Shown here piece by piece: positions 31,575 to 63,524 of a stretch of DNA of 64,000 nucleotides. A program made the position numbers and the translations under genes. The first letter of the stretch is position 1. The number at the start of each line of letters is the position of its first letter. The stretch spans positions 310,001 to 374,000 of IMG/VR virus record IMGVR_UViG_3300029922_000001; one strand, given 5' to 3'. The notes under the pieces were generated by a model. It did not search any database and was not told where the DNA came from. It saw only the letters and a program-made list of their open reading frames with translations.

Positions 31575-31634
31575 AAATCCCCAATAGCTGAAAATGTGGT
31601 ATACTGATCTACACAGTTAAGGAAAGATATTAAA

Positions 31635-32855
31635 ATGGCACAACCCTCACTTTATACAGACGTTACAGGAATTAGAACACCTGTCAAGATTAATACACCA
31701 GCGCAAAAGCGCATTACAGATATTAAGGTTGAAAAGGTAACCGTACCTCTTGATATCTTCATGAACAGAGTTCGTGAAAATTCTCTTTATAAGAGCGATT
31801 ATATGGAGCCAACTGAAGGATGGCTACGACTTTCAGCTAAGAACGACAAGTTGGTTGCTCCAAATGGCGTTTATCTTAATGATTTTGCAGTTAAGTCACT
31901 GGTTGGCTATACTGTTATCCCTACCACGGTAGTTGATTATTTGATGAATATTCACCCTGACCTTGGTCGTCTTGCTTATGAAGCTAATTGGGGACTTGAT
32001 ACTCGTAAGGCTACCGTTGATGCTTCAGATTCTAAGCGATATGCTAAGAAGTATTTGATGCGAAATCGACTTGATGACAAGGGCGATACGGTTTGTCGTG
32101 TTGTCGTTACCGATCAATATGCGATTTTAAACAACATCGAAACTCTTGAAATTCTACAGAAGGCACTTCCTGCTGGTAGCTTTAAGGATGCTAGGACATC
32201 TTACAGCTATGATAATGGTGATGATATGATTTGCGATATCATTCTCCCTGACTATGTTAAGGTAAATCAAAACGCTGAGTATGGTGTTATTGTTGGACTC
32301 AAGAACAGCGAAATTACTAAGTACACATTTGTTCTTGCTCCTGGTATTTTCGAAGCCAACACTGGTAATACGTTTATGTGGGAAAAGACAAGTTCTAAGT
32401 TTAAGATTAACGTTAAGCATCGTGGTGAAATTGATCGTGCTGTTCTACAAAATAGTGCAGTAACGGTTGTTCAAACGGTTCTTACTGAAGGTGAAAACTT
32501 GATTACTCAACTTAATTATCTCAAGGATATTAAGGTTAAGACAATTCCAGAATTGATTTTCCTTCTTGCTAAGGAACGATCTATCAGTAAGAACGTTGCA
32601 CGTCAATGGTATAAGAACTACCATAACTTCTATGGTGATGCTAAGACGGGTTATAACCTTGTTTCTGCTCTAGCTCATACAGCTAAGAAGTTTGAGGGTG
32701 AAGATAAGCGTAAGATTGAAGCTACAGCTTCAATGATTATGACTCCTGGGCTAGATGCTCCAGAAGCGAAGGTTAAGAGTCTTTGGTCAGCTTATATGTC
32801 TCGTGCAAATGAAATCAGCAAGGATGATCTAGACGACTTCTTGGACGATCTATAA
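31635..32855 (+). CDS. DUF932-like protein
   Basis: VVTDQYAILNN.E, KNSE..K.TF...P.IF...TGN, KHRG, LV.AL.H.A pattern. Confidence 0.55.
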   Translation: MAQPSLYTDVTGIRTPVKINTPAQKRITDIKVEKVTVPLDIFMNRVRENSLYKSDYMEPTEGWLRLSAKNDKLVAPNGVYLNDFAVKSLVGYTVIPTTVVDYLMNIHPDLGRLAYEANWGLDTRKATVDASDSKRYAKKYLMRNRLDDKGDTVCRVVVTDQYAILNNIETLEILQKALPAGSFKDARTSYSYDNGDDMICDIILPDYVKVNQNAEYGVIVGLKNSEITKYTFVLAPGIFEANTGNTFMWEKTSSKFKINVKHRGEIDRAVLQNSAVTVVQTVLTEGENLITQLNYLKDIKVKTIPELIFLLAKERSISKNVARQWYKNYHNFYGDAKTGYNLVSALAHTAKKFEGEDKRKIEATASMIMTPGLDAPEAKVKSLWSAYMSRANEISKDDLDDFLDDL

Positions 32856-32869
32856 GGTATACTACCGGT

Positions 32870-33097
32870 ATGGAAAATTTCAATACCGGTGGGTCTGTTT
32901 CTCTAGCCGCTTTACATCAACGTCAAGCGGCTACTAAGGTTTTATTAGAATCGTTGTATGGGGAAGTCTTAGCTAAAAAGGTTCACACAGATCGTAAATA
33001 TTTAAATTTACTGTTACATGTTCTTGATTCTGATGGTAAAGATCTAGAAGCAGTGGAGAATTTACGTACAATGCTTGAAAAGGATCTGGTATACTAG
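32870..33097 (+). CDS. hypothetical protein
   Basis: leaderless after AGGTATACT. Confidence 0.65.
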   Translation: MENFNTGGSVSLAALHQRQAATKVLLESLYGEVLAKKVHTDRKYLNLLLHVLDSDGKDLEAVENLRTMLEKDLVY

Positions 33098-33101
33098 AGT
33101 T

Positions 33102-33566
33102 ATGGAACTAACCAAAATTGAAACGGCACAAATTCTTGGCACTAAGCCAACTAGTAGACAAGACGCATATAACATCGGTAGGAGACTGGGAGATATTCTT
33201 CTTGAGCTAATTCCCGATCTGGATTTTAATCAGATTTTTGATAGTACTTTTATGGCTGTCATTCCTGATATGCTTGGCGAATACACTGACGAAGGCAACA
33301 TGACTCGAAAGGAATTGATTACGATTATGACACCTTTTCTTCAAGTAAGTGCGGAAATTGTTAGTGAAGATGTTTGTTTTCTCATGGTCTTGGCTATTTT
33401 GGATGTTTGCAATCTAAAGAATCCTTCTGCTGAACTTCAAGCGTGTCTTGATGAACTTCTAAGTGAAGTAAATACTTATATGGATATGGATTGCACCGAA
33501 TTTCAAGTAGCTTATTGGATTGCAAAAAGGATTATAAATGTAGCAAATACTTCAACTGAAGTATAA
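33102..33566 (+). CDS. hypothetical protein
   Basis: leaderless after GGTATACT. Confidence 0.65.
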   Translation: MELTKIETAQILGTKPTSRQDAYNIGRRLGDILLELIPDLDFNQIFDSTFMAVIPDMLGEYTDEGNMTRKELITIMTPFLQVSAEIVSEDVCFLMVLAILDVCNLKNPSAELQACLDELLSEVNTYMDMDCTEFQVAYWIAKRIINVANTSTEV

Positions 33567-33572
33567 TAAATC

Positions 33573-34286
33573 ATGTCTAAAATATCATACAAATTGTCAC
33601 CTTCTGATTTCGCTTTTTTGTATCATGAATGCAAAAGATGCTTTTATCGGAAGGTGAAGCTTAATATAGCTCCACCTAGAACTCCACTAGCAAACATCTT
33701 TACAGCTATTGATGGTGCTATGAAGGAAACTTTTAGTAAGGATGATTTGTCTGTATATTTTCCAGATTTACCTGCTCTACGTAGTTTAGATGGTTGGGGA
33801 GATAAGTATTTAACTTCTCAACCATTTCAAGTTCCAGAATATGATTTTAGTTTATATATTCTAGGTAAACTTGACAATTTATCAGAATTTGTTGATGGTT
33901 CAGGTTATGGTATTTTTGATTATAAAACAACAAAACCAAAACCAGAACACGTTCAAAAATACGCTAGACAACAACACGCTTATAAGTTCTGTTTGGAACA
34001 TCCTGGTACTGATAGATTTGGAAAACCTTCACCATTGATTACACCTGTCAATAAATTGGGATTGATTTGTTTTGAACCTAACAATTTCATGATTAAGAAA
34101 GCTGAACAAAAGGTTTGTTTACTTGGTGGATATGAATATTTAGATATTCCAGTTGATGAAGATGGATTTTTAGATTTCTTAGGTGAGATTGCGGATTTGA
34201 TCGCGCAAGAAAAATTACCAGAAAGCGGAGAAAACTGTAGTTATTGTCAATATTTAGAGAAAATAGTAGGTAAAATAAACCCATGA
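33573..34286 (+). CDS. PD-(D/E)XK (RecB/Cas4-like) nuclease
   Basis: LSPS, CKRCF, GKLDNL, IFDYKT, YARQQHAY, CSYCQY. Confidence 0.85.
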   Translation: MSKISYKLSPSDFAFLYHECKRCFYRKVKLNIAPPRTPLANIFTAIDGAMKETFSKDDLSVYFPDLPALRSLDGWGDKYLTSQPFQVPEYDFSLYILGKLDNLSEFVDGSGYGIFDYKTTKPKPEHVQKYARQQHAYKFCLEHPGTDRFGKPSPLITPVNKLGLICFEPNNFMIKKAEQKVCLLGGYEYLDIPVDEDGFLDFLGEIADLIAQEKLPESGENCSYCQYLEKIVGKINP

Positions 34287-34612
34287 AACCCAGTGAACTT
34301 GTTTCCAATGATTCGCCATACATGAAAATGGCACCTGATTGTATGTTAGGTGATCGTAATGATATTGTTCCAGGTAGTAGAGTTTTAGTTTGGTCTAAAG
34401 AGCTAAAAACTTTTCGTGTTGGCACTTTGATTAAGTCTGCTAATTGGCGTCATACTGTTTTGGTTGATGGTAATACTCGGTCTACACAATACACAGTCGT
34501 CTTTCTATGCAGTCTTAAAAATTGTAATTCTGCTTTAGCTATTATGAATGAAATTCGTACCTTCCATCAATATAACATGGATAAAATTACCGAAGCCATG
34601 AACGCATTGTGA
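34283..34612 (+). CDS. hypothetical SH3-like protein
   Basis: 109-aa ORF. Confidence 0.6.
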   Translation: MKPSELVSNDSPYMKMAPDCMLGDRNDIVPGSRVLVWSKELKTFRVGTLIKSANWRHTVLVDGNTRSTQYTVVFLCSLKNCNSALAIMNEIRTFHQYNMDKITEAMNAL

Positions 34613-34625
34613 CGTATAATAGAGC

Positions 34626-35768
34626 ATGAATAAAATCTCAAAGTTTGGTATGGCATTAGATGTTTTTGAAAAAACCGTAGCAACAAACTTATCATTAGCA
34701 GTTGACTGTGTTGGGAAAAAACTATGTGCTTCATTAACTGCATCTTCAACCGATCCTGGTTTTCATCATATTTTAATGTGGTTAGAAAGTTTAGGATTTT
34801 CTACAACTACAAATCATGTTAACTACACTTCAAATAATAGAGAAACCTCTCCTGCTGATGGAATTTATTTTTTAAGATGGAACACTAAAATTTTAATGTT
34901 AACCATTTCAAGTTTAGATCCAACTGTATTTGGAGCAATCAATAAAAAGATAAGTATTAAGATTTTAGGTGGAAACAGAGAAGACGTTAATGAAATCTTA
35001 GAAGAAATTAAACAACTTAAAGAAAATGTTAATAAAGATTTTATATCAATTTATACTTATGATGGTTGGTGGCGATTATCGGGTAAAAAGGCTCCAAGAC
35101 CTATAAAAACTTTGTTTTATGCGGATAATATATTAGAAGACTTAACTCAAGATTGTCTTAGTTTTTTTGAGAAACAAGAAGAATATAGAAATAAGGGAAT
35201 TCCTTGGCGTAGAGGTTATATTCTATATGGTGAACCAGGTAATGGAAAAACTAGTTTAGTGTTTGGTATTGCATCGCAATTAAAATTGCCTATTTATGTT
35301 GTAAATCTCACTCATGCAGATTCATTAGGGAAAATGCTTATTGATATTGATGAAAAATGTTTAATTCTAATTGAAGAAATTGATACATTTACTGTGTCCA
35401 GGGCTGATGAAAACACACCTATTCCTACTACTGAAAACCCAACATTAACCACACATAAAGTGTTTGGTGATTTTTTAAATAGCTTAGACGGTTTAACTTC
35501 TAAAGAAGGTATTGTTTTGTTTGCAACTACTAATCATAAAGATAAATTAGATGCAGCTTTGATTCGTCCTGGTAGATTTGATAAACATGTAGAAATTAAA
35601 AATTGCACTTCTGAATTAGCTAAAGAAATGTTTTTATTACATTTTCCGAAGAAATCTCCAACTGAGTTTGCAACATTATTTAAAAATAATGATTTATCTG
35701 TGAGCTATGCTCAAGAATTATTGCTAGAAATGAGTGTTACTGGGAATATCCCCAATGAGTTAAAATAA
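34626..35768 (+). CDS. BCS1-like AAA+ ATPase
   Basis: Y...GIPWRRGYILYGEPGNGKTS, IEEID, FLNSLDG, TTNH..KLD.ALIRPGRFD. Confidence 0.9.
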   Translation: MNKISKFGMALDVFEKTVATNLSLAVDCVGKKLCASLTASSTDPGFHHILMWLESLGFSTTTNHVNYTSNNRETSPADGIYFLRWNTKILMLTISSLDPTVFGAINKKISIKILGGNREDVNEILEEIKQLKENVNKDFISIYTYDGWWRLSGKKAPRPIKTLFYADNILEDLTQDCLSFFEKQEEYRNKGIPWRRGYILYGEPGNGKTSLVFGIASQLKLPIYVVNLTHADSLGKMLIDIDEKCLILIEEIDTFTVSRADENTPIPTTENPTLTTHKVFGDFLNSLDGLTSKEGIVLFATTNHKDKLDAALIRPGRFDKHVEIKNCTSELAKEMFLLHFPKKSPTEFATLFKNNDLSVSYAQELLLEMSVTGNIPNELK

Positions 35769-35785
35769 GGTATACTAAAATTACA

Positions 35786-36055
35786 ATGGCAACAATGACA
35801 GCAGGACAAATGATTGGTTGGGATCATGGTTATTTTAAAATTAAAAACGGCAGAACGACTTATCAGGCTGTTATGTTCAATTGTGCAGGAAGACAAGAAA
35901 AAGTTCTTCTTGCACGTCTAGATAACAATCTCAAGCAAACCAATAGGTATGTTGATTGGGATACCATTCTTGAATTTAATGATGAACAGTTTGAAGAATT
36001 TAAGATTTGGTCAGCTAATGAGGATCTTCAAGACATGTCAAAGGCGGGAAACTAA
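35786..36055 (+). CDS. hypothetical protein
   Basis: class II promoter upstream. Confidence 0.7.
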   Translation: MATMTAGQMIGWDHGYFKIKNGRTTYQAVMFNCAGRQEKVLLARLDNNLKQTNRYVDWDTILEFNDEQFEEFKIWSANEDLQDMSKAGN

Positions 36056-36525
36056 TGGGTAAAAAAATATTACAAAAGCCAAGTAAAATCGTTAAAGAAT
36101 CGCAAGATTATAATGCTTGCCGTGACTACATCGAAAATAAATATAAGTGTGATATTCGTGATTTTGGTGGATTTTATAAGCATCCTAAAAAGAATGATGC
36201 TTTACTTAAAAAGCTATGTGTCAAACATGGTCATCCTTATGAACTCATACGTAATGGTTTTAGCCCTAGTCATCCAGATAGCGATAAATTAATGATTAGT
36301 GTTAGAAATGTTTTTGATGAATACGAAAAACTCCAACCTCCATATCAAGATTTTTGGCATTGGATTGTTGAAAATAATAGCATCAATAATGGTGGATATT
36401 TTCAACTGAGTAATTATGATTTTGAAACATGTGAAGAAGATTTCCAAAAGACAATCTTAGAGTATTTCTTATCAGAATTTGGTGAAGGTGAAAATCGTCG
36501 CGTTGAGTTCTATGTGGAGTGGTAA
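36055..36525 (+). CDS. hypothetical protein
   Basis: TAATG coupling. Confidence 0.7.
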   Translation: MGKKILQKPSKIVKESQDYNACRDYIENKYKCDIRDFGGFYKHPKKNDALLKKLCVKHGHPYELIRNGFSPSHPDSDKLMISVRNVFDEYEKLQPPYQDFWHWIVENNSINNGGYFQLSNYDFETCEEDFQKTILEYFLSEFGEGENRRVEFYVEW

Positions 36526-36527
36526 TT

Positions 36528-36887
36528 ATGGAAATAAATTTTAAAACAGACAATCTAGAAACAATAAAAAAATGGTTAGAGGAAAATTACACTATTCCTG
36601 AAGATTATAGCATAACCTTTGAAGTTAGATATAATCCTAAATTCAAAGACGGGGATCGTGTTGAGTTTATTGAAGACTATTCCGATAATGAAGTCTATGA
36701 AACAGATAAGGGAGATAAAGCAACCGTAATCAGTTTGAATAATTATGCTGGTATTGAACTCCGTATTGATGACTTAGAATATGAAGATAATAATATTATT
36801 TATATAGTTGATCACCGTGGCAGAACAAACGGGCATGGAACATATGCACCAAATTGGGTGCTTAGAAAGATTGAAGATAATGTATAA
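36528..36887 (+). CDS. hypothetical protein
   Basis: ORF in operon spacing. Confidence 0.7.
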   Translation: MEINFKTDNLETIKKWLEENYTIPEDYSITFEVRYNPKFKDGDRVEFIEDYSDNEVYETDKGDKATVISLNNYAGIELRIDDLEYEDNNIIYIVDHRGRTNGHGTYAPNWVLRKIEDNV

Positions 36888-36942
36888 TAAACATGCTAAG
36901 ATCGTGGCTTAACAGCGTGAAGACTTGCAAGGAAAAATAAAT

Positions 36943-37392
36943 ATGTCAATAACACGCTGTAAATTTTATGTATCGTCGGTCACTGTCGAAGCCCATCATG
37001 GCTTTGAAAACGAAGAAGAAGGACGAACTTGGTCCAAAGTCAACTTAAATGCATCTTACAGTCCAGATCCTGAGACTGAAAATAATTCATTTTGGAAGTA
37101 TACACCAAGTGGTTCTATGTCTCTGAGTGTTAAGTATGGTCAACCTTGTGAATTTAAACCTGGTCAATTTTGGTATATTGATACCGAAGCTGATTCAAGT
37201 GGTAAATACATACTAACTAAGCTTAATAAAGAGTCAGAAGATTACTTATCTGTAGAACTCAAAGCACAATCAGGTACGGAATATGATTGGGTTACTTTTG
37301 GTTTTACTGTAAGCAATCCTAATGTATTTCCAATGTTTACAAACTTGGGTGCAAAATATAAAGTCACCCTATATCCAGCGAAGAAAAAATGA
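36943..37392 (+). CDS. hypothetical phage protein
   Basis: SD AAGGA; RCKF.V...EN..FWKYTPSG. Confidence 0.75.
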   Translation: MSITRCKFYVSSVTVEAHHGFENEEEGRTWSKVNLNASYSPDPETENNSFWKYTPSGSMSLSVKYGQPCEFKPGQFWYIDTEADSSGKYILTKLNKESEDYLSVELKAQSGTEYDWVTFGFTVSNPNVFPMFTNLGAKYKVTLYPAKKK

Positions 37393-37673
37393 AAAAACTA
37401 AAAGTTGATTTTTGTTATATCTATACCTTCTTTCTTGATGATCAGCCATTGACTCAAGAAAGAAGGTTGATTGAAATTGAGTTCCCAGATAAGCACAAAG
37501 AGGTTTGTGCATTATATTGGCAAGATCACTCTACTATAGATAGAGATATGAATGCTACGCATTATGATGTTTCCCATGTTCCTGCTATTAAAACAGACTT
37601 ACATGGTCTTGAAGTTACTCTTAGACTGCAAGATTTGGATTATCAAAATATGTTGTTTGATTTTGTGGAATAA
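37389..37673 (+). CDS. hypothetical protein
   Basis: ATGA overlap. Confidence 0.65.
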   Translation: MKKLKVDFCYIYTFFLDDQPLTQERRLIEIEFPDKHKEVCALYWQDHSTIDRDMNATHYDVSHVPAIKTDLHGLEVTLRLQDLDYQNMLFDFVE

Positions 37674-37688
37674 GCGTATAATATCCAC

Positions 37689-38264
37689 ATGGATGGTTTT
37701 TATGAACATAGATTTCTTAATCTAGTTGTAGGTGACGAAAGAGATTATTCTCTGAAACCCACAACTCAACACATTGAACAATGGTTGGATTATATTTATA
37801 ACGTTTATTCACAACAAAACGAAGAAACTATGTTGATCGAAAAGATTTTTGGTCAGAGAACATTTAGTGAATCTAGTTATTTTTGGGTTAAAACTATTGC
37901 TGATGATTTGAATTATCAAATACCATCATTAGAACAAATAGGTAGAGATATCAATATTGAGCCTAATTGGGATTGTAAAACTGCTAGAGAATGGCAGGAA
38001 GAAAATAATGATATCAAGGTGATTATTCCCTGTGGTTTTCCTAAAAATAGTTGGGATACAGAACGCATTCCTTGGGGTGAATATTGTCATCGAAGGAAAG
38101 AATCAGAGTGTGATAGCACTGGATTTATTAAGCATTTAAAAAACAAAGATAAACTTAGCTATACAATTGCATGTGAAGCAAAATGTGGTCAAAAATTAAG
38201 ATCATGTCTGGTTCTTGTAATGGGAAAACTGCCACTGTACTTGATCTTTGTGCTACTTACTTAA
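37689..38264 (+). CDS. hypothetical protein
   Basis: leaderless after TATAAT; overlaps the next ORF. Confidence 0.6.
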   Translation: MDGFYEHRFLNLVVGDERDYSLKPTTQHIEQWLDYIYNVYSQQNEETMLIEKIFGQRTFSESSYFWVKTIADDLNYQIPSLEQIGRDINIEPNWDCKTAREWQEENNDIKVIIPCGFPKNSWDTERIPWGEYCHRRKESECDSTGFIKHLKNKDKLSYTIACEAKCGQKLRSCLVLVMGKLPLYLIFVLLT

Positions 38265-38503
38265 TGGAAAAATCTAAGAAATACAATAAAGTTCATCAAG
38301 ATGAATCTGATCAGTGTTTTAAAGATGCTGGTGAATATATCAGAATTGCTACTTGGGTTGGTAACATTTTAGATAATGAATGTTTAAGATATAAAGAGGT
38401 AACCAAAGAACATGTATATCAACTATGGGATAGTTTTCATGGTCGCAATATGTTTTCGGAAATTCCACCAGAATATAGAAAAGATTTCTATAATAAGAAG
38501 TAA
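38183..38503 (+). CDS. hypothetical protein
   Basis: 106-aa ORF. Confidence 0.55.
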   Translation: MWSKIKIMSGSCNGKTATVLDLCATYLMEKSKKYNKVHQDESDQCFKDAGEYIRIATWVGNILDNECLRYKEVTKEHVYQLWDSFHGRNMFSEIPPEYRKDFYNKK

Positions 38504-38504
38504 T

Positions 38505-39044: not shown

Positions 39045-39274
39045 CACAAGAATTAGTGCAAAAATTAAAAAACGGAGACAAGTTTAGCTGGAATAACACC
39101 AGCATTTCCACAAAAATTTACAATAAAGTGGTTGGACGAATATTCTATGACGAAGTAGATTATGTTATCTACCAAAGCATTCTAGTGAATCATGGCATCA
39201 TTGGTGTTTTTGGTGAAGATATAAATAGCGAAATATGGGATGCGGCAACCGAATATAAGATATCAAATGATTAA
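39041..39274 (+). CDS. hypothetical protein
   Basis: ATGA overlap. Confidence 0.6.
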   Translation: MTQELVQKLKNGDKFSWNNTSISTKIYNKVVGRIFYDEVDYVIYQSILVNHGIIGVFGEDINSEIWDAATEYKISND

Positions 39275-56246: not shown

Positions 56247-56284
56247 AAAATCCCCAATAGGGGATTCATAGGTATACTGTCGTC

Positions 56285-56707: not shown

Positions 56708-56907
56708 TTTATAAATTAAAACAGAAGTTGATGACACTTTTAGGCTTTTCATCGGTTATAAAATTAACTAATACACGCTATTTCGCTACTGATAATTTTT
56801 ATTATGCCAAGTTATTATGTTGGCTGTTTAATGGTAAAATCTATCGAAAAACACGTAGCCGACATTCTAGGGCGTTTTGGGAAATTAGAGTAAAAAACAA
56901 AAGGTAA
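56704..56907 (+). CDS. hypothetical protein
   Basis: ATGA overlap. Confidence 0.5.
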   Translation: MIYKLKQKLMTLLGFSSVIKLTNTRYFATDNFYYAKLLCWLFNGKIYRKTRSRHSRAFWEIRVKNKR

Positions 56908-56925
56908 TGAGGTATACTAATAAAC

Positions 56926-58086
56926 ATGGAAGAATTTACAGAAGAAATTAATGAAACATCTAGAAAATTAGCTAGTATTCAAAGGATTTTAGCCTTGGAA
57001 CCAATTCCAGGTGCGGATCGTATTGAAACAGCTACAATTTTGGGATGGAAGGTCGTAGTAGAAAAAGGAAAGTATAGAGTTGGGCAATTAGTTGTATACG
57101 CTGAAATCGACAGTTTATTCCCTGCTAGACCTGAATATGAATTTCTTTCTAAGACTGGTTATCGTATCAAAACCATTCGATTAAAACAGCAGGTAAGCCA
57201 AGGCATTGTATTTCCATTGTCAGTTTTAAAGTGGAATGATAACATCAAAATTATTGGTGACGAAGTGTTGGATGATAATTATGATTACATTAATGATATG
57301 TGGAATGAAGAATCGCCTTTGCTATTACTTCAAGATATGAATAATGATTCAAATCCTGCTATTTTTCTTGCTGAAGGAACTGATGTTACTGAATGGATTG
57401 GTGTAACCAAATATGAACCAGTTGTACCTGCACAATTACGGGGAGTAGCTAGAGGTGGTTTTCCAAGTTGGTTGCATAAGACGGATGAATGTCGGATTCA
57501 GGCTATTCCTGATTTATTAGAAAGACACATTGGTACAACGATTAGAGGACACGAAAAGCTCGACGGCAGTAGTTGTACTATGTATATTCGCAATGGTGAT
57601 TTTGGAGTATGTTCTAGAAATTTGAATTTAAAGCACACTGAAGGTAATAGTTTCTGGGAAATAGCTATGAAGTTCCAAGTTGAAGCCATGATGAAACATT
57701 GTTTCCCAGATTATAATTTTGCAATCCAAGGCGAACTAATCGGTCCTGGCATTCAAGGTAACAAATATAATCTTAGAGAAACAACGATTAGATTGTTTAA
57801 TGTGTTTGATATTGATAAAGATGAATACTTGCATGATCTTGAATCAAAGTATGTTGCTCAACAATTAGGTTTAGAGTGGTGTCCTTGGGTGATGGATTAT
57901 GTTATTACTGAAAACACCACAGTTGAAGAACTATTGTTGTTAGCGCAAGGTCCATCGGCTTTAAATCCTAACCAGGAAAGAGAGGGGTTGGTTTGGCGAC
58001 CATTAGTTGAGTCTAAAGATGATAAAATCGGAAGATTTTCCTTTAAGACTATTTCTAATAAGTTCTTGCTAAAAAACGGAGAGTAA
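56926..58086 (+). CDS. ATP-dependent RNA ligase, DRB0094 family
   Basis: N-terminal OB LASIQRI..LEPIPGADRIE; KTDECRIQ, HEKLDGSS, VCSRN, QGELIGPGIQGN.Y, REGLV, SFKTISNKFLLK. Confidence 0.92.
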   Translation: MEEFTEEINETSRKLASIQRILALEPIPGADRIETATILGWKVVVEKGKYRVGQLVVYAEIDSLFPARPEYEFLSKTGYRIKTIRLKQQVSQGIVFPLSVLKWNDNIKIIGDEVLDDNYDYINDMWNEESPLLLLQDMNNDSNPAIFLAEGTDVTEWIGVTKYEPVVPAQLRGVARGGFPSWLHKTDECRIQAIPDLLERHIGTTIRGHEKLDGSSCTMYIRNGDFGVCSRNLNLKHTEGNSFWEIAMKFQVEAMMKHCFPDYNFAIQGELIGPGIQGNKYNLRETTIRLFNVFDIDKDEYLHDLESKYVAQQLGLEWCPWVMDYVITENTTVEELLLLAQGPSALNPNQEREGLVWRPLVESKDDKIGRFSFKTISNKFLLKNGE

Positions 58087-58124
58087 TATTTCCCCATTGG
58101 GGAAATTCGAGGTATACTCAGATC

Positions 58125-58499
58125 ATGAGATTTAATGCTAATGCTTGTATTGCTCCTGATGGCAAAATATATCGTACATGTTGTATGGGGCATTGGGGTA
58201 TTTTATCAGAACTTACTGGTTATCATTTAGCAGTTGAAGATTGGTATACAGAAAAAAATGAAGTAATGCCTGATCCATTTAAATGGAAAGATGATATGAT
58301 TTCGCTTCGAAATTGGTTGATTGTATCTGGTCCAGAACATTACACTAAATGTCTTTATAGAGTTTCACATAGTGTTAGACCTACTAAGGCTTCTTTAGAT
58401 TCTTTATTTACTATAATTATTGAGTCTAAAGAATTTGGTGATGAATTAACTCATAATCAATTATATGAAATTTATAAATCTTTAAACAAAGAACTATAA
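58125..58499 (+). CDS. hypothetical protein
   Basis: class II promoter. Confidence 0.7.
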   Translation: MRFNANACIAPDGKIYRTCCMGHWGILSELTGYHLAVEDWYTEKNEVMPDPFKWKDDMISLRNWLIVSGPEHYTKCLYRVSHSVRPTKASLDSLFTIIIESKEFGDELTHNQLYEIYKSLNKEL

Positions 58500-58519
58500 C
58501 AATGTGGTATACTATTATT

Positions 58520-58729
58520 ATGGACAATCAATCTACAACATCTACAAAACCTGAATATTTTAAATCGTTAAAATTCCTTCAACTAATCATTACAATTCTT
58601 GGATGGCTTTGGATTGGGGGTTTATTGGGTCTATTTGTGTTTCATTCTGGATGGGTAATTATCGGTTTGGCAATCGCTTGGCTTGTATTGAGAAATTATG
58701 AGGAACATCAATTTAAGGTCAAGAGATAA
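58520..58729 (+). CDS. hypothetical membrane protein
   Basis: leaderless; two TM segments. Confidence 0.65.
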   Translation: MDNQSTTSTKPEYFKSLKFLQLIITILGWLWIGGLLGLFVFHSGWVIIGLAIAWLVLRNYEEHQFKVKR

Positions 58730-58942
58730 ATGAAAAACGAAGTTGTGCGCAAAGAAGGATATGATGCTTATATGTTGTGTTTAGAGAGATATAAGGATGC
58801 CCCCAATATTAAAAACATTAATATGTGGGCGTTAGATAATCCATATTCTAATGAATCTAATGAATCTAATGAATACGATGAATGGATGATGGGTGCATTA
58901 GATGCGGCTGTAGAACATCCAAAACCCCCAACAGATAATTAA
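58730..58942 (+). CDS. Rmf-like miniprotein
   Basis: KEGYDAY...NPYS.....EYDEWMMGALDA. Confidence 0.55.
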   Translation: MKNEVVRKEGYDAYMLCLERYKDAPNIKNINMWALDNPYSNESNESNEYDEWMMGALDAAVEHPKPPTDN

Positions 58943-58958
58943 GAGGTATACTCAAATC

Positions 58959-59405
58959 ATGAATAGAGACGATATTAAAGCTGGTGTATTTTTGAGCATG
59001 TCAGGTACTTGGCAAGAACAGCATAATGTTAAGACATTGTTGGATTGGACAGATTTTGGTTATGCAACAGTTGTTAAAGTTTCTGGTATTATGGTTTATC
59101 TTAAAACCGTTAATAATAAAGATGTACTAATGCATGTCGAAGAAGTTGAAAAATATTGGGAACTTCATCCTGTTACTGATTTTAGAGGTACAGTGCTTAA
59201 TATTGGCGATAAGTGTGCTGTAGCTGATTCCGGTAAAGATATTTTTGTTGGCACCATTCAGAAGTTTGGTAAGTGGATTCATAAGGGTTGTGGTTGGTGT
59301 GAGGTTCAAGTCACCTTTGGCGACATCGAATGTACAACTTATGAGTGGAAAAAGAACGCAAACACTAGAACTCATTCAGATCATAAGGGTAGAATTAAGC
59401 TATGA
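58959..59405 (+). CDS. hypothetical protein
   Basis: class II promoter. Confidence 0.7.
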   Translation: MNRDDIKAGVFLSMSGTWQEQHNVKTLLDWTDFGYATVVKVSGIMVYLKTVNNKDVLMHVEEVEKYWELHPVTDFRGTVLNIGDKCAVADSGKDIFVGTIQKFGKWIHKGCGWCEVQVTFGDIECTTYEWKKNANTRTHSDHKGRIKL

Positions 59406-59586: not shown

Positions 59587-60366
59587 TTGGGAAATTCGAG
59601 GTTAATAAAAATAAAGATAATTTCCCAATATAAGGACTACTATGACTCAGGAATGCAATACGGATTTGATCCTGATTTGCTTTTTGTGCGCGAAACTAAG
59701 GAAATCGAAGTTCCCAAAACACGTAATGATTATAAATACATCCAAAGTATTCTAAGTCTATGTCATGATTATTACAACACGGTTTACTTCTTGTTCTTCT
59801 GTGGTAAAGTATATCCATTAGTGCGTATTTGGGGCTGTACTGCTCTGTATGGCACTGTTACGGACTATATTGAAGAACAACACGCCATTCTAATTAAAGA
59901 GCCTCACAACCGATTAGCACTAGAGTTCGTGAATGGTTCTGAAAAGACTTGGAGAAATGTTTCTTTCAACTTTAGTGAAAAGGGACTGATTGCTCTCGAA
60001 AAGCATTTACAAACAGTGGTAGTACCTAGTGAAATCTTTATTGAAATGGATGCACCTTATTTTGTTGTGAGTGAGTCAGGTAAGAGTGGCTTAAACATTA
60101 TTAAGAATCCACCCCTCAATAAGTATTCATTCTTTAAGTTGTTAGATCCATTCAATTGTTATCAAGAAATCCGAATGTATATGGGTAATGTCTTAACCAC
60201 AATTAATATGATGCCATATACAACTGGTGGCGACAAGGTAGTAGCGCAACAACATGGATTTGATGATATGTCTTTCCGAACTGCCGCACCAGGACAAAAG
60301 AAGTTGAATAGAAAAATTAATAGATTACGTAAGAAGGGAGAATTAATCCCCAATGACGTAATCTAA
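59587..60366 (+). CDS. conserved phage hypothetical protein
   Basis: KIIS.YKDYYDS...DPF.CYQEI.MY...HGFD..SFR. Confidence 0.7.
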   Translation: MGNSRLIKIKIISQYKDYYDSGMQYGFDPDLLFVRETKEIEVPKTRNDYKYIQSILSLCHDYYNTVYFLFFCGKVYPLVRIWGCTALYGTVTDYIEEQHAILIKEPHNRLALEFVNGSEKTWRNVSFNFSEKGLIALEKHLQTVVVPSEIFIEMDAPYFVVSESGKSGLNIIKNPPLNKYSFFKLLDPFNCYQEIRMYMGNVLTTINMMPYTTGGDKVVAQQHGFDDMSFRTAAPGQKKLNRKINRLRKKGELIPNDVI

Positions 60367-60380
60367 GGTATACTCCGATC

Positions 60381-60743
60381 ATGAATATCAAAAACTCAAT
60401 GAAATTGGTTGAAACAGAACTTGAAAAAGTAATTGATTTGGCACATAAACACCTTCAGGATATGGCTGATGAAATTGTTGCTAAATATGAATATATTAAT
60501 GAATTTTGTATATGCAATGGCTCAATTTGGTTCTGTACCACATTAGATACGGGTAGATCATATTTTGGTCCAACTGACACTATTTTTAGTGATTATGCTG
60601 GTGATTATGAATATTTTAAAGATGAATGGTTTAGACACCATGATGATGACGAACTCATTCCAAAATGGGTTGAAAATTTCATCGAAGATTTTGGAGAAGT
60701 AAACAAGTTTTATGATTTTCTTGACGAACGGAGATTGGCTTAA
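60381..60743 (+). CDS. hypothetical protein
   Basis: class II promoter. Confidence 0.7.
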   Translation: MNIKNSMKLVETELEKVIDLAHKHLQDMADEIVAKYEYINEFCICNGSIWFCTTLDTGRSYFGPTDTIFSDYAGDYEYFKDEWFRHHDDDELIPKWVENFIEDFGEVNKFYDFLDERRLA

Positions 60744-61008
60744 TTTTTAAAACACATTTAAATTTGCGAGTCCGTACCTGAAATGGTGGCAATAACCGAT
60801 TTAACTTTTAAACTGGTAATTTAAAATAGGTTATGAAAACGGATGGGCAAGCTGCTAAATAGGAGAATACCACCTATTGCGCCAAGCGGCAAATCCCCAA
60901 AAGGGATTTCGAGGGAATGTTGTTATTTATTTTATTGTTCATACTCATATAGAAGAATTAACTGCAATAGAAATCCCCCAATAGAGAAAAAGAAGGTATA
61001 CTGAACGC

Positions 61009-61560
61009 ATGAAGATTTATAGTAAGGATTTGGGTTGGGCTGGTGGTCGTGTATTTATTGCAAACGATAGAGAAGACGCAATTCGTATCATGAAAACCCT
61101 TAATCCGCGTTGGTGGAGTGAAGAAGAAAATAAGACTTTTGTTCGACATGAAAGTGTAAGGCGATTTTATGCCTCAGTGCAAACACTTAAAACTGTTGAA
61201 CCGATTCCTAATACTAGTTTATATGTTTGCCACTTCGTAAATGATGATAGGCAAGTTGTTACAAATTCTAGTGAATTTACAGTCGGTCAAAAGGTGGCTT
61301 TCTTTCCTACAGAAGTTACATATAATGGTGTCGTCATTAAACTACGACGACTTCAAAAGTTTTGGTCACATGGTATTATTGAACCATTTGATACAGAATT
61401 AGAAGATAAAACTGATATTTCAGAAATATTTGGGGCGATTCCAGCACGTTGGGATACTATTACAATAGAAACACCATATACCGATGATGATTACCTGAAT
61501 GAATGGACTGAACACGAAGTCAAATCTGGATTGTCATTGTATTTCTCAGGGGATTGGTAA
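61009..61560 (+). CDS. protein with an OB-fold (tRNA-binding/ligase N-terminal-like) insert
   Basis: ASVQT...VEPIPN...VV....F.VGQKVAFFP...IKLRRLQKFWSHGI resembles the N-terminus of 56926. Confidence 0.55.
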   Translation: MKIYSKDLGWAGGRVFIANDREDAIRIMKTLNPRWWSEEENKTFVRHESVRRFYASVQTLKTVEPIPNTSLYVCHFVNDDRQVVTNSSEFTVGQKVAFFPTEVTYNGVVIKLRRLQKFWSHGIIEPFDTELEDKTDISEIFGAIPARWDTITIETPYTDDDYLNEWTEHEVKSGLSLYFSGDW

Positions 61561-61596
61561 AATCCCCAACAGTGGAATAAGAGGTATACTACGATC

Positions 61597-61881
61597 ATGT
61601 CAAAATCATCACCTATGAAAAGAATTAAGCGTCGGGCACTGAGAGCAGTTAAGGAAACTTTTGAGACGCCTTGGAATCTGCCAAAGTATTGTTGGTTCTC
61701 AGCTACACACAAAGCTAAGATGGTCGCATCTAGGGCAAAGTATAGAGAGGTTTTCTATCAATTGCTAGATGGTACAGTTGTGGAGATTACTGAGGTCTTT
61801 ACTGATCCTAATCGTAAGCCAACTTATGATGATGCAGTGTGTATTGGTCAAGGTCATTATCATGATCTTCAGGCGGTTTAA
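61597..61881 (+). CDS. hypothetical protein
   Basis: class II promoter. Confidence 0.7.
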   Translation: MSKSSPMKRIKRRALRAVKETFETPWNLPKYCWFSATHKAKMVASRAKYREVFYQLLDGTVVEITEVFTDPNRKPTYDDAVCIGQGHYHDLQAV

Positions 61882-61882
61882 T

Positions 61883-62473
61883 ATGAATATTTCACAAACA
61901 ATTAAGAGAACCTGTTGGTTTGCTGCTTTAATGCATGGTGGTCCTGTCTATCTAATGGATTGGTCTGATTATCGTGATTGGGTGCATTCACGTAATCCAT
62001 ACGGTAAGACTAAGGAAAAGAGCATTTTTGATTATGAAATGACTACCTTTAGAAAAGCTGATAGAGATTCATATTGGAGCTATTACGGTAGCGGTCCTGA
62101 ATTTAGCGTTGATTTGGCAAAGAAGCTATTAGCTGATATTGACGCTGGCATTGATTGGGATGCTATGAAGGAAATTGAAGATGATGAAGAAAGCGTGTTC
62201 AATGGAACTTTTGCAACAGATCATCCAAGTGTTCCTATTGTTAAGGGTGTTCTAATTCTAAAGAATGGATCTAAGTATCCTTGGGTTGCTAATCTTAATA
62301 TTAATTTGAGCGGACTAGCTAAGGTATTGGCATTCATGAAGAAATGGGAAAACAAGACAGACGAAGAAATTACAGAAGCACTCAAAATGAAACTAGAAGA
62401 CGCTTTAACCTCTAGGGATTACGAATTCCGTCACAAGATGCAATCGAATCCTTTTGCTAAAAATACATATTAA
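61883..62473 (+). CDS. hypothetical protein
   Basis: start MNISQT. Confidence 0.7.
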   Translation: MNISQTIKRTCWFAALMHGGPVYLMDWSDYRDWVHSRNPYGKTKEKSIFDYEMTTFRKADRDSYWSYYGSGPEFSVDLAKKLLADIDAGIDWDAMKEIEDDEESVFNGTFATDHPSVPIVKGVLILKNGSKYPWVANLNINLSGLAKVLAFMKKWENKTDEEITEALKMKLEDALTSRDYEFRHKMQSNPFAKNTY

Positions 62474-62475
62474 AC

Positions 62476-62913
62476 ATGAAACAAGTACCTGATTATATTC
62501 AAATTAAAAGAATCTATATTCGTTCTGCTTCTGCTGGTGTATTCAATAGACTAGCAGAATTGACTGAAGATGGTGGTTCTATGATTGATTGGCTGAATGG
62601 CGCAAGAAATGGTTGTAAGAACTATATTAGTTACATGGCAATAGATACAAGGGTCAATAAAATCGTTGGCTGGGTTTGTGTAACTTCTATTTCTGATTGG
62701 CATCTTTATAATGGGGAAAATAAAATTGGAACTTTCATTGATCGTGATTACCGAAGACGAGGAATTGGTTCTGCATTGGTTAGACAAGTTCAGACTAAAG
62801 AAAAGAGTTTTATTTATTGGAAAGGTGAATACGATGCAAGAAATTTTTATAAGGAAAACGTGCCTAATTCAATATATTACAACAACCTATGGAATCAGGT
62901 AAATCCCCAATAA
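62476..62913 (+). CDS. GNAT-family acetyltransferase
   Basis: IVGWVC...IGTFIDRDYRRRGIGSALV...ARNFY. Confidence 0.85.
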   Translation: MKQVPDYIQIKRIYIRSASAGVFNRLAELTEDGGSMIDWLNGARNGCKNYISYMAIDTRVNKIVGWVCVTSISDWHLYNGENKIGTFIDRDYRRRGIGSALVRQVQTKEKSFIYWKGEYDARNFYKENVPNSIYYNNLWNQVNPQ

Positions 62914-63096
62914 GGGATTTCGAGGTATATTCTATTTATGAATGGAACCTGATGGTAATCACTATTTTAAGAATTGGTACAAGCTAACTGATAAAGGTGC
63001 TGCTATTGTATCACATTGGCTTGATCTAAAATATGATGCTAACCATATTAATTGCGGTCATCTACCTTCAAAATTAGTTCCTTTCGGATGGTTGGC

Positions 63097-63306
63097 ATGA
63101 AGTCTAAACCAATTAAAAAAGAAAAGTACATTCCAGTAATAAAGCAATGCGCTGACTGTGGTGTTGATGTAGAATTTACAGAGTATCAATTGATGTCTAG
63201 TGCAATCATGGATGATGAAACAATGTGCAATAAGTGCAGAGATGAATGGCGTATTAAAACTGGTTGGACTCCAGGCTCAACACGATATCGAAGAAAAGGT
63301 CAATAA
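63097..63306 (+). CDS. zinc-ribbon protein
   Basis: CADCG...CNKC. Confidence 0.6.
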   Translation: MKSKPIKKEKYIPVIKQCADCGVDVEFTEYQLMSSAIMDDETMCNKCRDEWRIKTGWTPGSTRYRRKGQ

Positions 63307-63488
63307 TGAACAAGAAAATCACACTTAGACAATTGACGGAAAAATATCCAGAATATCTGGATGTTCCTATTTTTATTTATAAACGGGAAGGGACACCTTA
63401 TGGTTATATAAAAGTAAATGATTTATCTATTAGATTTAATGATGATATTAACGATAAATATATTAAAGGAATTGTTATTTCCGTATAA
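63306..63488 (+). CDS. hypothetical protein
   Basis: TAATG coupling. Confidence 0.55.
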   Translation: MNKKITLRQLTEKYPEYLDVPIFIYKREGTPYGYIKVNDLSIRFNDDINDKYIKGIVISV

Positions 63489-63524
63489 ATCCCCAATAGG
63501 GGGAATTAAGGTATACTTACGACC

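What the first reader, a model, noticed from the sequence alone, without database searches (positions are those of the whole stretch)
31579..63515. Phage-specific promoter CCCCAA-N13-GG-TATACT making leaderless mRNAs for dozens of genes
Seen: about 18 copies with an invariant 15 nt between CCCCAA and TATACT, and ATG usually 6-7 nt after the -10 hexamer with no SD. Many more genes have only the GGTATACT/GGTATAAT half. About a third of the copies are palindromic (e.g. TTTCCCC-AATA-GGGGAAA at 47393). Known: T4 middle promoters pair a host -10 with an activator box near -30. Inference: a middle regulon read by host RNAP plus a phage activator or a re-specified sigma region 4, possibly after ADP-ribosylation, with one leaderless transcript per small gene. 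This also points to a host that favours leaderless translation.
Basis: partly seen in the sequence, partly recalled or inferred. Interest (0 to 1): 0.75.

Follow-up and report, generated by a model that had tools for sequence, protein, structure and literature searches.

The report
Phage promoter placed directly on start codons
A phage of more than 0.5 Mb from peat carries well over 100 copies of its own 27-bp promoter, set so that transcription should start on the ATG of each small gene, giving mRNAs with no leader or ribosome-binding site; the principle is known from a few phages but not this consensus or scale.

Summary
CCCCAA-N13-GGTATACT occurs 15 times on the + strand of the window (0 expected). 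It occurs 90 times in the 441.5-kb contig, all on the + strand between 340 kb and the contig end, and 27 more times in the first 12 kb of the contig that continues the assembly. The spacer is 13 nt in 90 of 91 copies.

An ATG lies exactly 6 nt after TATACT in 96 of 133 GGTATACT sites. Position -1 is a pyrimidine in 112 of 124. The same motif sits 8 nt before a tRNA gene. The few copies that stand away from an ATG are followed by a Shine-Dalgarno leader. It is therefore a promoter, not a ribosome site, and the mRNAs are predicted to be leaderless. No RNA data exist.

Leaderless design is genome-wide. Two further classes, TATAAT and TGTATAAW, also sit 5-8 nt before ATGs. About 200 of roughly 570 genes are affected.

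The phage encodes four sigma-like proteins and an IF3. I found no RNA polymerase, MotA or AsiA. I infer that a phage sigma reads this class, rather than a T4-style activator. That step is not shown.

Promoters also mark the ends of a duplicated gene cassette, as PeSL motifs do in T4-type phages.

Verdict: a new variant of a known kind. Interest is moderate to high.

The parts
31579..31637 (+). Full promoter (CCCCAA 31579, GGTATACT 31598). This copy has a 23-nt leader with AAGGAAAG before ATG 31635.
   Evidence: when the ATG is not at +1, a Shine-Dalgarno-like leader appears
35750..35788 (+). Full promoter; ATG 35786 is 9 nt after TATACT
44100..44136 (+). Full promoter; ATG 44134 is 7 nt after TATACT
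47393..47431 (+). Full promoter with the 8-bp palindrome TTTCCCC-AATA-GGGGAAA; ATG 47429 at predicted +1
49611..49646 (+). Full promoter; ATG 49644 at +1
49985..50020 (+). Full promoter lying in the 3' end of the upstream ORF; ATG 50018 at +1
50293..50328 (+). Full promoter, identical over 31 nt to the copy at 49985; ATG 50326 at +1
54073..54108 (+). Full promoter; ATG 54106 at +1 (336-aa repeat protein)
55396..55431 (+). Full promoter; ATG 55429 at +1
   Evidence: homology with the paralogous unit ends at -7
56252..56287 (+). Full promoter with a 7-bp palindrome; ATG 56285 at +1
58926..58961 (+). Full promoter; ATG 58959 at +1
60348..60383 (+). Full promoter; ATG 60381 at +1
60976..61011 (+). 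Full promoter; ATG 61009 at +1
61564..61599 (+). Full promoter; ATG 61597 at +1
63491..63527 (+). Full promoter; ATG 63525 is 7 nt after TATACT
28823..58528 (+). Fifteen -10-only promoters (GGTATACT with no CCCCAA box) at 28823, 32856, 33088, 40783, 41231, 41462, 43211, 47835, 50864, 51980, 52961, 56605, 56911 (RNA ligase), 58111 (CCCCAT box) and 58506. Most have an ATG 6-7 nt downstream. Two more such sites lie outside this span, at 746 and 9527.
   Evidence: The RNA ligase N-terminus aligns from residue 8 to PHROG profile position 3, so the ATG at +1/+2 is the true start.
32853..33096 (+). One-gene cassette (75 aa) bounded by two GGTATACT promoters. It is 97.5% identical to contig 433599-433842. 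Homology starts at -17 of the first promoter and ends at -6 of the next.
55111..56278 (+). Paralogous units 55111-55422 and 55964-56278 (82.5% identity); the homology ends exactly at -7 of the promoters
43586..43673 (+). GGTATAAT promoter whose hexamer ends 8 nt before an amber-suppressor tRNA (CTA, 43602-43673)
   Evidence: a -10 hexamer with the same geometry drives a non-coding gene
44986..45014 (+). Perfect TTGACA-N17-TATAAT promoter, the consensus sigma-70-type (presumed host-type) reference in the same genome. A second, TTGACT-N17-TATAAT, is at 30389-30417.

Best explanation
The motif aaaaTCCCCAAyA-N-RAGG-TATACT is a phage-specific promoter of the sigma-70-family type.

Anatomy. TATACT occupies -12 to -7, GG occupies -14/-13, and CCCCAA occupies -33 to -28. 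Transcription is predicted to start 7 nt after the hexamer, on the A of the ATG, with a pyrimidine at -1. Each small gene of a 100-115-kb accessory arm is therefore made as a leaderless mRNA whose 5'-terminal AUG is its only translation signal.

Reader (inferred, not shown). Host core RNA polymerase reads the class with one of the four phage-encoded sigma-like proteins. The best candidates are:
- the FliA/SigF-like sigma at contig 229402-229983, which has its own TATAAT promoter and a Shine-Dalgarno leader;
- the sigma-like ORF at 397154-398047, which lies inside the arm in a stretch with TATAAT and TGTATAA motifs upstream of its neighbours.

Second role. Because promoter plus ATG is a complete expression signal, each gene is a self-contained cassette, and the promoters also serve as homologous junctions for cassette shuffling.

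My confidence by step:
- promoter with +1 at or next to the ATG: about 0.85;
- role in cassette shuffling: about 0.5.
For: Promoter rather than ribosome site:
- The geometry is fixed: the spacer is 13 nt in 90 of 91 copies.
- Positions -1/+1 are Y/A in 112 of 124 sites, the usual preference at bacterial start sites.
- A full copy has its hexamer ending 8 nt before tRNA-Arg at contig 413604.
- Copies away from an ATG are followed by leaders carrying AAGGA or GGAG.
- Genuine Shine-Dalgarno motifs elsewhere in the genome lie 5-9 nt from the ATG, whereas the GAGG inside the motif lies 12 nt away.

Real gene starts:
- 92 of 96 ATGs at +1 open ORFs of 40 aa or more, against 28% of random ATGs in the arm.
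- 70 of 96 have no alternative start codon upstream in the open frame.
- The RNA ligase aligns to its family from its N-terminus.

A separate class:
- The same genome has perfect TTGACA-N17-TATAAT promoters before tRNA clusters and non-coding regions.
- 27 of 125 GGTATACT promoters have no box, so the -10 region carries the class identity.

- Sigma-70-family ORFs are present.
- No Rpb1/Rpb2-type or T7-type RNA polymerase domains were found.
- No MotA or AsiA was found.

Genome-wide leaderless design:
- 238 ATG starts have a TATA[AC][AT] hexamer ending 5-7 nt upstream, against 37 at control offsets of 10-12 nt.
- Divergent gene pairs lie about 38 bp apart.
- Phage G, the nearest cultured relative by portal protein, shows no such spacing peak and has ordinary GGAGG spacing.

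Cassette junctions.
Against: - There is no transcript evidence. No RNA run was listed, so +1 is inferred from geometry only.
- No related phage carries the motif, so there is no phylogenetic footprint. All four peat runs hold the identical sequence.
- The link between a sigma and these promoters is untested; the complex prediction was not folded.
- TATACT keeps A-11 and T-7, and a few copies pair it with TTGACA-like boxes at 16-17 nt (contig 400550, 378600, 361959). The host primary sigma could therefore read the -10 region.
- At least 78 kb of the genome lies on another contig. Only its first 12 kb (minus a 1.5-kb gap) was held as DNA, and it was not searched for proteins.
- Divergent phage RNA polymerases can escape Pfam models.
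Confidence: 0.6

Rival explanations
1. T4-middle-like sigma appropriation. The host primary sigma reads TATACT. A phage DNA-binding activator, with or without an anti-sigma protein or covalent modification of the polymerase, binds CCCCAA near -30 in place of sigma region 4.
For: - The layout is bipartite, with the box centred near -30 and only 15 nt from the hexamer, as for MotA boxes (established knowledge of T4).
- TATACT keeps the critical A-11 and T-7.
- Some copies are palindromic, which would suit a dimeric binder.
- The arm holds about 200 unannotated small proteins that could include such a factor.
Against: - No MotA or AsiA homologue was found.
- The -10 region is itself class-specific (GG at -14/-13 and C at -8 invariant).
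- 27 of 125 promoters have no box.
- Four sigma-like genes offer a simpler reader.
Confidence: 0.2
2. These are ordinary early promoters read by unmodified host holoenzyme. GGTATACT acts as an extended -10, and CCCCAA is an operator for a phage or host repressor, or a UP-like enhancer.
For: - Promoters with only an extended -10 work without a -35 element (PMC3950348).
- Many copies lack the box.
- The arm of small genes looks like a host-takeover region; it includes RNA ligases, a polynucleotide-kinase-like ATPase and a RuvB-like ATPase.
Against: - The genome's own consensus sigma-70-type promoters and its TGnTATAAT leaderless class differ from this class at -15 to -13 and at -8.
- The box is almost never found in the arm without the -10 element at 13 nt. 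That is the behaviour of a promoter element, not of a separable operator.
Confidence: 0.12
3. The repeat is mainly a recombination or mobility element (PeSL-like cassette junction), and its promoter activity is secondary.
For: - A 244-bp cassette duplicated 90 kb apart is bounded by -17 of one promoter and -6 of the next.
- Homology between the paralogous units ends at -7.
- The assembly forks exactly after GGTATACT into two different genes.
- PeSL elements are described in PMC2839356 and PMC4122927.
Against: - Only three such junctions were seen.
- The exact placement relative to ATGs and to a tRNA, the Y-1/A+1 signature and the strict strand polarity are explained by transcription, not by recombination.
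- This reading complements the best explanation rather than excluding it.
Confidence: 0.1
4. It is a translation signal: an unusual long-spaced Shine-Dalgarno (GAGGU) or an enhancer or operator on the mRNA, with transcription starting further upstream.
For: - GAGGT is complementary to the anti-Shine-Dalgarno sequence.
- Terminators are scarce, so read-through transcripts would carry the motif inside them.
Against: - The spacing is 12 nt, against 5-9 nt for real Shine-Dalgarno motifs in this genome.
- The invariant TATACT is not explained by rRNA pairing.
- The motif precedes a tRNA.
- Copies distant from an ATG carry a separate Shine-Dalgarno motif.
- Phage G shows what Shine-Dalgarno-led genes look like.
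Confidence: 0.03
5. The class is read by an undetected phage-encoded RNA polymerase.
For: - Several giant ORFs (up to 3178 aa) have no annotation.
- 78 kb of the genome was not searched.
- The T7-type model rang in no control genome, so that result is not informative.
Against: - The promoter has the anatomy of a sigma-70-family promoter.
- No Rpb1 or Rpb2 domains were found, although the controls rang.
Confidence: 0.05

Closest known systems
Leaderless middle/late genes of Thermus phages phiYS40 and P23-45 (Sevostyanova et al. 2007, as summarised in PMC3594737; P23-45 extended -10 promoters, PMC3950348)
   Same: - The phage makes most mRNAs of a temporal class without a leader.
- The promoters depend chiefly on the -10 region.
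- Host core polymerase is used.
- Translation-initiation factors are implicated: IF2/IF3 levels change in phiYS40, and this phage encodes its own IF3.
   Different: - The host of those phages belongs to a phylum already known for leaderless genes; the host here is unknown and the phage has 34% G+C.
- Here there is an added, fixed -33 box and a non-host -10 variant.
- About 150 copies occur in one arm.
- All three promoter classes in this phage are leaderless.
- Nothing here is experimentally mapped.
T4 middle promoters (MotA box plus host -10, with AsiA)
   Same: A bipartite phage promoter with a box near -30 and a TAnnnT -10, placed before many small genes.
   Different: - The box sequence differs, and it is optional.
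- The -10 region is class-specific.
- No MotA or AsiA was found.
- T4 mRNAs have leaders.
Phage-encoded sigma cascades (SPO1 gp28 and gp33/34; T4 gp55 with the sliding clamp). This comparison rests on my own knowledge.
   Same: - Several small phage sigma-like proteins and several promoter consensus sequences occur in one genome.
- Two sigma-like genes flank a DnaN-like clamp gene (contig 56293-59876).
- The structural genes carry a TGTATAAW motif that recalls the T4 late TATAAATA.
   Different: - The consensus sequences are unrelated.
- The pairing of each sigma with a promoter class is not established here.
- The start codon lies at +1.
PeSL mobile regulatory cassettes of T4-type phages (PMC2839356, PMC4122927)
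   Same: - A repeated promoter motif, sometimes with a stem-loop, flanks small ORFs in a hyperplastic region.
- The motif coincides with the ends of duplicated or swapped modules.
   Different: - Only 13% of copies have a stem-loop.
- No terminator function is evident.
- The junction is the -10 element.
- There is no pair of related genomes to compare.
'-10 next to the ORF' architecture of Deinococcus-Thermus and Actinobacteria (PMC12340547, PMC3160421)
   Same: TAnnnT ends 5-7 nt before the start codon, and the promoter doubles as the only initiation signal.
   Different: That is a property of cellular genomes with high G+C. Here it is a low-G+C virus with three distinct -10 variants.

Membership tests
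Sigma-70-family promoter | -10 hexamer TAnnnT with A at -11 and T at -7 | tested here: met
   TATACT is invariant in all GGTATACT sites used for the matrix
Sigma-70-family promoter | Upstream element at a fixed distance | tested here: met
   CCCCAA lies 13 nt before GGTATACT in 90 of 91 copies. That is 15 nt from the hexamer, shorter than the canonical 17.
Sigma-70-family promoter | Start site 6-8 nt after the hexamer, purine at +1 and pyrimidine at -1 | tested here: inconclusive
   The sequence signature is present (Y at -1 in 112 of 124; A at +1 in 108 of 124), but no 5' ends are mapped because no RNA run was listed.
Leaderless mRNA genes | Start codon at the predicted transcript 5' end, with no room for a Shine-Dalgarno motif | tested here: met
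   An ATG lies exactly 6 nt after the hexamer in 96 of 133 sites, and 92 of 96 open ORFs of 40 aa or more
Leaderless mRNA genes | 5'-terminal AUG shown on RNA, and translation without a leader | not testable with these tools
   No transcriptome or ribosome data are available for this uncultured phage
T4 middle promoter / MotA-AsiA system | MotA box (TGCTT core) at -30 | tested here: not met
   The box is TCCCCAA
T4 middle promoter / MotA-AsiA system | MotA and AsiA proteins encoded | tested here: not met
   PF09114 and PF09010 gave no match at E <= 1 in the 441-kb contig. The 78-kb continuation was not searched.
Phage sigma-factor regulon | Phage encodes sigma-70-family proteins | tested here: met
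   Two ORFs pass Pfam cut-offs (regions 2 and 4). Two more match only PHROG sigma families.
Phage sigma-factor regulon | Consensus differs from the presumed host-type (consensus sigma-70) promoters in the same genome | tested here: met
   TTGACA-N17-TATAAT stands before stable-RNA genes, against CCCCAA-N13-GGTATACT
Phage sigma-factor regulon | The phage sigma directs initiation at these promoters | not testable with these tools
   The complex-prediction job was not folded and gives no evidence either way
PeSL-like mobile regulatory cassette | Repeated promoter motif flanking small ORFs in a variable region | tested here: met
   125 GGTATACT sites lie downstream of contig position 300 kb (121 of them in the arm from 340 kb, which holds 199 genes), all on one strand
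PeSL-like mobile regulatory cassette | Homology breakpoints or indels coincide with the motif | tested here: met
   Three cases:
PeSL-like mobile regulatory cassette | Stem-loop/terminator joined to the promoter | tested here: not met
   Only 12 of 90 copies have a stem of 3 bp or more, none is followed by a T-run, and terminators are not enriched

The most novel reading that the evidence does not exclude
The whole accessory arm (at least 115 kb, about 150 promoters) of a phage of more than 0.5 Mb may be a library of self-contained one-gene cassettes. In this reading a promoter of 14-40 bp is at once the transcription signal, the translation signal (because it places AUG at the 5' end) and the homologous junction for cassette exchange. 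The cassettes would be read by a dedicated phage sigma, and the phage's own IF3 would retune host ribosomes to accept 5'-AUG mRNAs. If so, the 'missing Shine-Dalgarno' noted in some huge phages (PMC7162821) would reflect leaderless expression. The host could then be a low-G+C bacterium not known for leaderless translation.
Probability: 0.25. Interest if true: 0.8.

Novelty: new variant of a known kind. Interest (0 to 1): 0.6.

Why it matters
- It gives a concrete, testable regulatory grammar for an uncultured phage of more than 0.5 Mb: three promoter classes, four sigma-like proteins and an IF3.
- It shows that a virus can run about a third of its genes without ribosome-binding sites.
- It offers an explanation for huge phages that lack Shine-Dalgarno motifs.
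- It warns that gene callers trained on Shine-Dalgarno motifs will misplace starts in such genomes.
- The 27-bp element plus ATG is a minimal, portable expression cassette. With its sigma it could make an orthogonal expression part.
- The cassette junctions suggest how accessory-gene arms of giant phages are shuffled.

Tried and rejected
Transcript evidence
- No RNA run was listed for the locus.
- Laying four peat DNA runs on a promoter-dense 6 kb gave 100% identical contigs that merely break at the repeated promoter. There were no variants to footprint.

Relatives
- megablast of 8 kb of the window against phage records found nothing.
- The terminase is at most 27% identical to any phage record, and none was found in IMG/VR.
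- The exact pattern occurs only in this contig, in pieces of the same population, and in single (probably chance) hits elsewhere.

Sigma-promoter pairing
- The complex-prediction job with one sigma and a promoter duplex was not folded.

Host inference
- The phage IF3 is at most 43% identical to IF3 of many unrelated phyla.
- The phage DnaK is about 45% identical to DnaK from a wide range of bacteria.
- The host therefore stays unknown.

Other readings considered and dropped
- Shine-Dalgarno reading: rejected on spacing, the tRNA case and the leadered copies.
- N4-like hairpin promoters: rejected because only 13% of copies are palindromic and the hairpin would lie at -33 to -22.
- GTATAC as a restriction or methylation site: it is neither avoided nor enriched outside the motif.
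- Canonical -35/-10 promoters as a whole are not more frequent than chance; only a handful of perfect ones stand out.

Protein families sought and not found
- RNA polymerase, MotA/AsiA (66, 67), S21 (92), IF1 (93) and S1 (103) all gave nothing.

Non-coding stretch
- Rfam found nothing in the 1.6-kb non-coding stretch.

Full report
WHERE THE WINDOW LIES. The window is bases 310001-374000 of a 441,498-bp virus contig from a peat metagenome, with 33.9% G+C. A crude ORF call gives about 566 genes at 90% coding density with the standard code. From about 340 kb to the contig end, about 200 genes with a median length of 100-130 aa lie almost all on the + strand. The finding concerns this arm.

The contig ends exactly on ...GGTATACT. 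Its last 127 nt are identical to the first 127 nt of a 78-kb contig from the same assembly, and that contig's first 12 kb continue the arm. The genome is therefore at least about 520 kb, despite the 100% completeness estimate shown with the record.

CHECK OF THE OBSERVATION. CCCCAA-N15-TATACT occurs 16 times in the window against 0.00 in shuffles. Fifteen copies are on the + strand and all have GG before the hexamer. GGTATAMT occurs 44 times against 5 expected.

In the whole contig there are 90 full copies on the + strand and 1 on the - strand, all beyond 340 kb. The continuation contig adds 27 more. The spacer is 13 nt in 90 of 91 copies.

The position matrix of 124 sites reads aaaaTCCCCAAyA-rrrr-AAwww-RAGG-TATACT-nnnnw-Y-ATG-R. 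It carries no information beyond -38 and +4, so the copies are not simply duplicated DNA.

An ATG follows the hexamer at exactly 6 nt in 96 of 133 GGTATACT sites, and at 7 nt in 8. The palindrome at 47393 is real. Palindromic copies make up 5 of 15 in the window but only 12 of 90 genome-wide.

A PROMOTER, NOT A RIBOSOME SITE. Five observations separate the two readings.
- With TATACT at -12 to -7, +1 falls on the A of the ATG. Position -1 is C or T in 112 of 124 sites, which is the usual pyrimidine/purine preference at bacterial start sites (the preference itself is established knowledge).
- A full copy has its hexamer ending 8 nt before tRNA-Arg(UCU) at contig 413604. A GGTATAAT box has the same geometry before the suppressor tRNA at window 43602. 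A translation signal has no business before a tRNA.
- In the few copies that are not next to an ATG (window 31579; contig 408703, 436225, 402712, 409716), the leader carries AAGGA, GGAG or GAGG a few nucleotides before the ATG. The host ribosome can therefore use Shine-Dalgarno motifs, and the phage supplies one only when the promoter is displaced.
- Genuine Shine-Dalgarno motifs elsewhere in the genome peak at 5-9 nt from the ATG. The GAGG inside the motif lies 12 nt away.
- 92 of 96 ATGs at +1 open ORFs of 40 aa or more, against 28% of random ATGs in the arm. In 70 of 96 there is no other start codon upstream in the open frame. The RNA ligase at window 56926 aligns to its family from residue 8.

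A few copies have GTG at +1. All of this is sequence inference: no RNA run was listed.

LEADERLESS DESIGN IS GENOME-WIDE. Two further classes appear outside the arm.
- TATAAT is followed by an ATG at 5 or 6 nt in 114 cases, against about 6-30 at other offsets. Of these, 94 open ORFs of 40 aa or more. The class often has TGn or TG in front of the hexamer.
- TGTATAAW is followed by an ATG at 6-8 nt in 32 of 89 copies. It stands before the portal gene and the giant ORFs between 118 and 220 kb, so it is probably the late class.

Divergent gene pairs have their two ATGs only about 38 bp apart, with nothing between them but two -10 boxes (for example contig 238134/238149). In total, 238 ATG starts have a TATA[AC][AT] hexamer ending 5-7 nt upstream, against 37 at control offsets of 10-12 nt. 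That is roughly a third of all genes.

As a control I took a comparable arm of Bacillus phage G, whose portal is the best match among the phage records (27% identity). It shows no such spacing peak and has ordinary GGAGG at 7-10 nt. The pattern is therefore not a by-product of an A+T-rich phage genome.

WHO READS THE CLASS (INFERENCE). The same genome has perfect TTGACA-N17-TATAAT promoters, mostly before tRNA clusters and non-coding stretches (contig 7122, 171848, 354986, 388204, 389264). These consensus sigma-70-type promoters are presumably what the host's primary sigma recognises.

The class under study differs from them in three ways:
- at the -35 position, where it has CCCCAA, 2 bp closer to the hexamer;
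- in the extended -10, where it has RAGG instead of TGn;
- at -8, where C is invariant.

Of 125 GGTATACT promoters, 27 have three or more mismatches to the box. Conversely, the box almost never occurs in the arm without the -10 element at 13 nt. The class identity therefore resides in the -10 region. That points to a sigma rather than to an activator bound at -30.

The phage encodes two ORFs that pass Pfam cut-offs for sigma regions 2 and/or 4:
- contig 59271-59876 (201 aa);
- contig 229402-229983 (193 aa), which is FliA/SigF/SigB-like and whose nearest phage relatives are SigF-like sigmas of Bacillus phages.

Two more ORFs match only PHROG sigma families: contig 56293-56937, and contig 397154-398047, which lies inside the arm.

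No Rpb1, Rpb2 or T7-type polymerase domains were found, including in the giant ORFs. No MotA or AsiA was found.

From memory, group-3 sigmas typically read G-rich extended -10 elements with short spacers (sigma-B GGGTAT, sigma-28 TAAA-N15-GCCGATAA). That would suit the 193-aa protein, but it is a lead, not a test. The one available test, a predicted sigma-DNA complex, was not folded.

I could not establish the temporal class. The arm encodes three RNA ligases, a polynucleotide-kinase-like ATPase, a RuvB-like ATPase and an Ogg-like glycosylase. That resembles early or middle accessory functions.

PROMOTERS AS CASSETTE JUNCTIONS.
- A 244-bp module at window 32853-33096, holding a 75-aa gene, recurs 90 kb away at contig 433599-433842 with 97.5% identity. 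Homology begins at -17 of the promoter in front and ends at -6 of the next promoter. The -35 regions and the flanks are unrelated.
- The paralogous units at window 55111-55422 and 55964-56278 lose homology exactly at -7.
- The assembly forks immediately after GGTATACT into two different genes.

This is the behaviour described for PeSL motifs in T4-type hyperplastic regions (PMC2839356, PMC4122927). Here, however, a stem-loop is present in only 13% of copies, and terminators are not enriched.

COMPARISON WITH WHAT IS KNOWN. Leaderless phage genes are known. Thermus phage phiYS40 makes most middle and late mRNAs without leaders and shifts IF2/IF3 levels (PMC3594737, citing Sevostyanova 2007). 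P23-45 switches the host polymerase to extended -10 promoters (PMC3950348). A -10 box next to the ORF is common in Deinococcus-Thermus and Actinobacteria (PMC12340547, PMC3160421).

Huge phages were reported to encode IF1 or IF3 and, in some clades, to lack recognisable Shine-Dalgarno motifs (PMC7162821). This phage encodes a full-length IF3 at contig 254486-255016 but no IF1, S1 or S21. IF3 is reported to disfavour leaderless mRNAs (Tedin et al. 1999, listed in PMC12340547), so a phage copy is worth testing.

I found no paper reporting this consensus or a leaderless regime in a huge phage.

VERDICT. The promoter and leaderless reading is well supported by sequence logic but unproven without RNA. 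The T4-middle analogy fails its membership tests. This is a new variant of a known kind, and its scale, its fixed geometry and its second role as a cassette junction are unusual.

LIMITS. There are no transcripts, no related genomes and no known host. At least 66 kb of the genome was not examined.

Noticed in passing
window 44986-46640: A perfect TTGACA-N17-TATAAT promoter is followed by about 1.6 kb without ORFs, ending in an intrinsic terminator at 46610-46636. Inside are 10 CGAGA pentamers, while the whole + strand has only 78 (about 236 expected). Four units of 56-65 nt lie at 45130-45352. Each has a hairpin whose stem varies with compensatory changes, a conserved loop GGTTCTCGAAAA, and then AACCGAGA. 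There is no Rfam match. It looks like a precursor of small structured RNAs, possibly tRNA-minihelix mimics.
   Followed up: partly
contig-wide tRNA genes (for example contig 7542-7964, 172047-172810, 251533-253586, 275078-275670): Most of the 24 phage tRNA genes are preceded, within the last ~12 nt, by the motif CGAGA(A/T)A(A/T)AT; within the tRNA clusters this is the trailer that follows the preceding tRNA. It looks like a processing punctuation mark shared with the non-coding stretch above.
   Followed up: partly
window 43602-43673 and contig 172128-172200: There are two amber-suppressor tRNAs (anticodon CTA). TAG is the rarest stop codon (47 of 566 called genes). There is no sign of large-scale recoding, since coding density is 90% with the standard code.
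   Followed up: partly
contig 254486-255016 (-): A full-length IF3 homologue of 176 aa (IF3_C E = 4e-20) is encoded, with no IF1, S1 or S21. This is notable in a phage whose mRNAs are largely leaderless, because IF3 is reported to disfavour such mRNAs.
   Followed up: partly
contig end 441372-441498; contigs Ga0302280_1000099 and Ga0302280_1114496: The contig is not the whole genome. Two other contigs start with its last 127 nt and diverge right after GGTATACT. The 78-kb one continues the promoter arm for 12 kb, so the genome is at least about 520 kb.
   Followed up: partly
contig 20-230 kb, for example 76835 (portal), 127356, 137230, 145808, 150402, 213223: A third motif, TGTATAAW, usually after an A/T-rich stretch, lies 6-8 nt (sometimes 10-36 nt, with a Shine-Dalgarno motif) before the structural and giant ORFs and before one sigma-like gene (59257). 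It is probably the late class and recalls the T4 late TATAAATA. Two sigma-like genes flank a DnaN-like clamp gene (contig 56293-59876).
   Followed up: partly
contig 6565/6579, 175893/175897, 238134/238149, 293198/293202, 318476/318487 (the last pair = window 8476/8487): These are divergent gene pairs whose ATGs lie only about 30-40 bp apart, with two back-to-back TATAAT boxes and no room for leaders.
   Followed up: yes
window 54106-55116: The 336-aa ORF holds tandem repeats with a 69-nt period (23 aa, about 90% identical). It matches PHROG families of unknown function.
   Followed up: no
contig 80233-85788: A 1851-aa ORF carries an intein-like insert with a LAGLIDADG domain.
   Followed up: no
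contig 202603-204387 (-); arm 340-441 kb: The phage encodes a DnaK/Hsp70 about 45% identical to bacterial DnaK. The arm also holds three RNA ligases, a ZIP-family transporter, an Ogg-like glycosylase and a RuvB-like ATPase.
   Followed up: no
L165 (Bacillus phage G 400001-450000): Phage G, the nearest cultured relative by portal (27% identity), has a similar arm of small + strand genes. Its intergenic gaps are about 100 nt, GGAGG lies 7-10 nt before ATGs, and there is no spacing peak between -10 hexamers and ATGs.
   Followed up: yes
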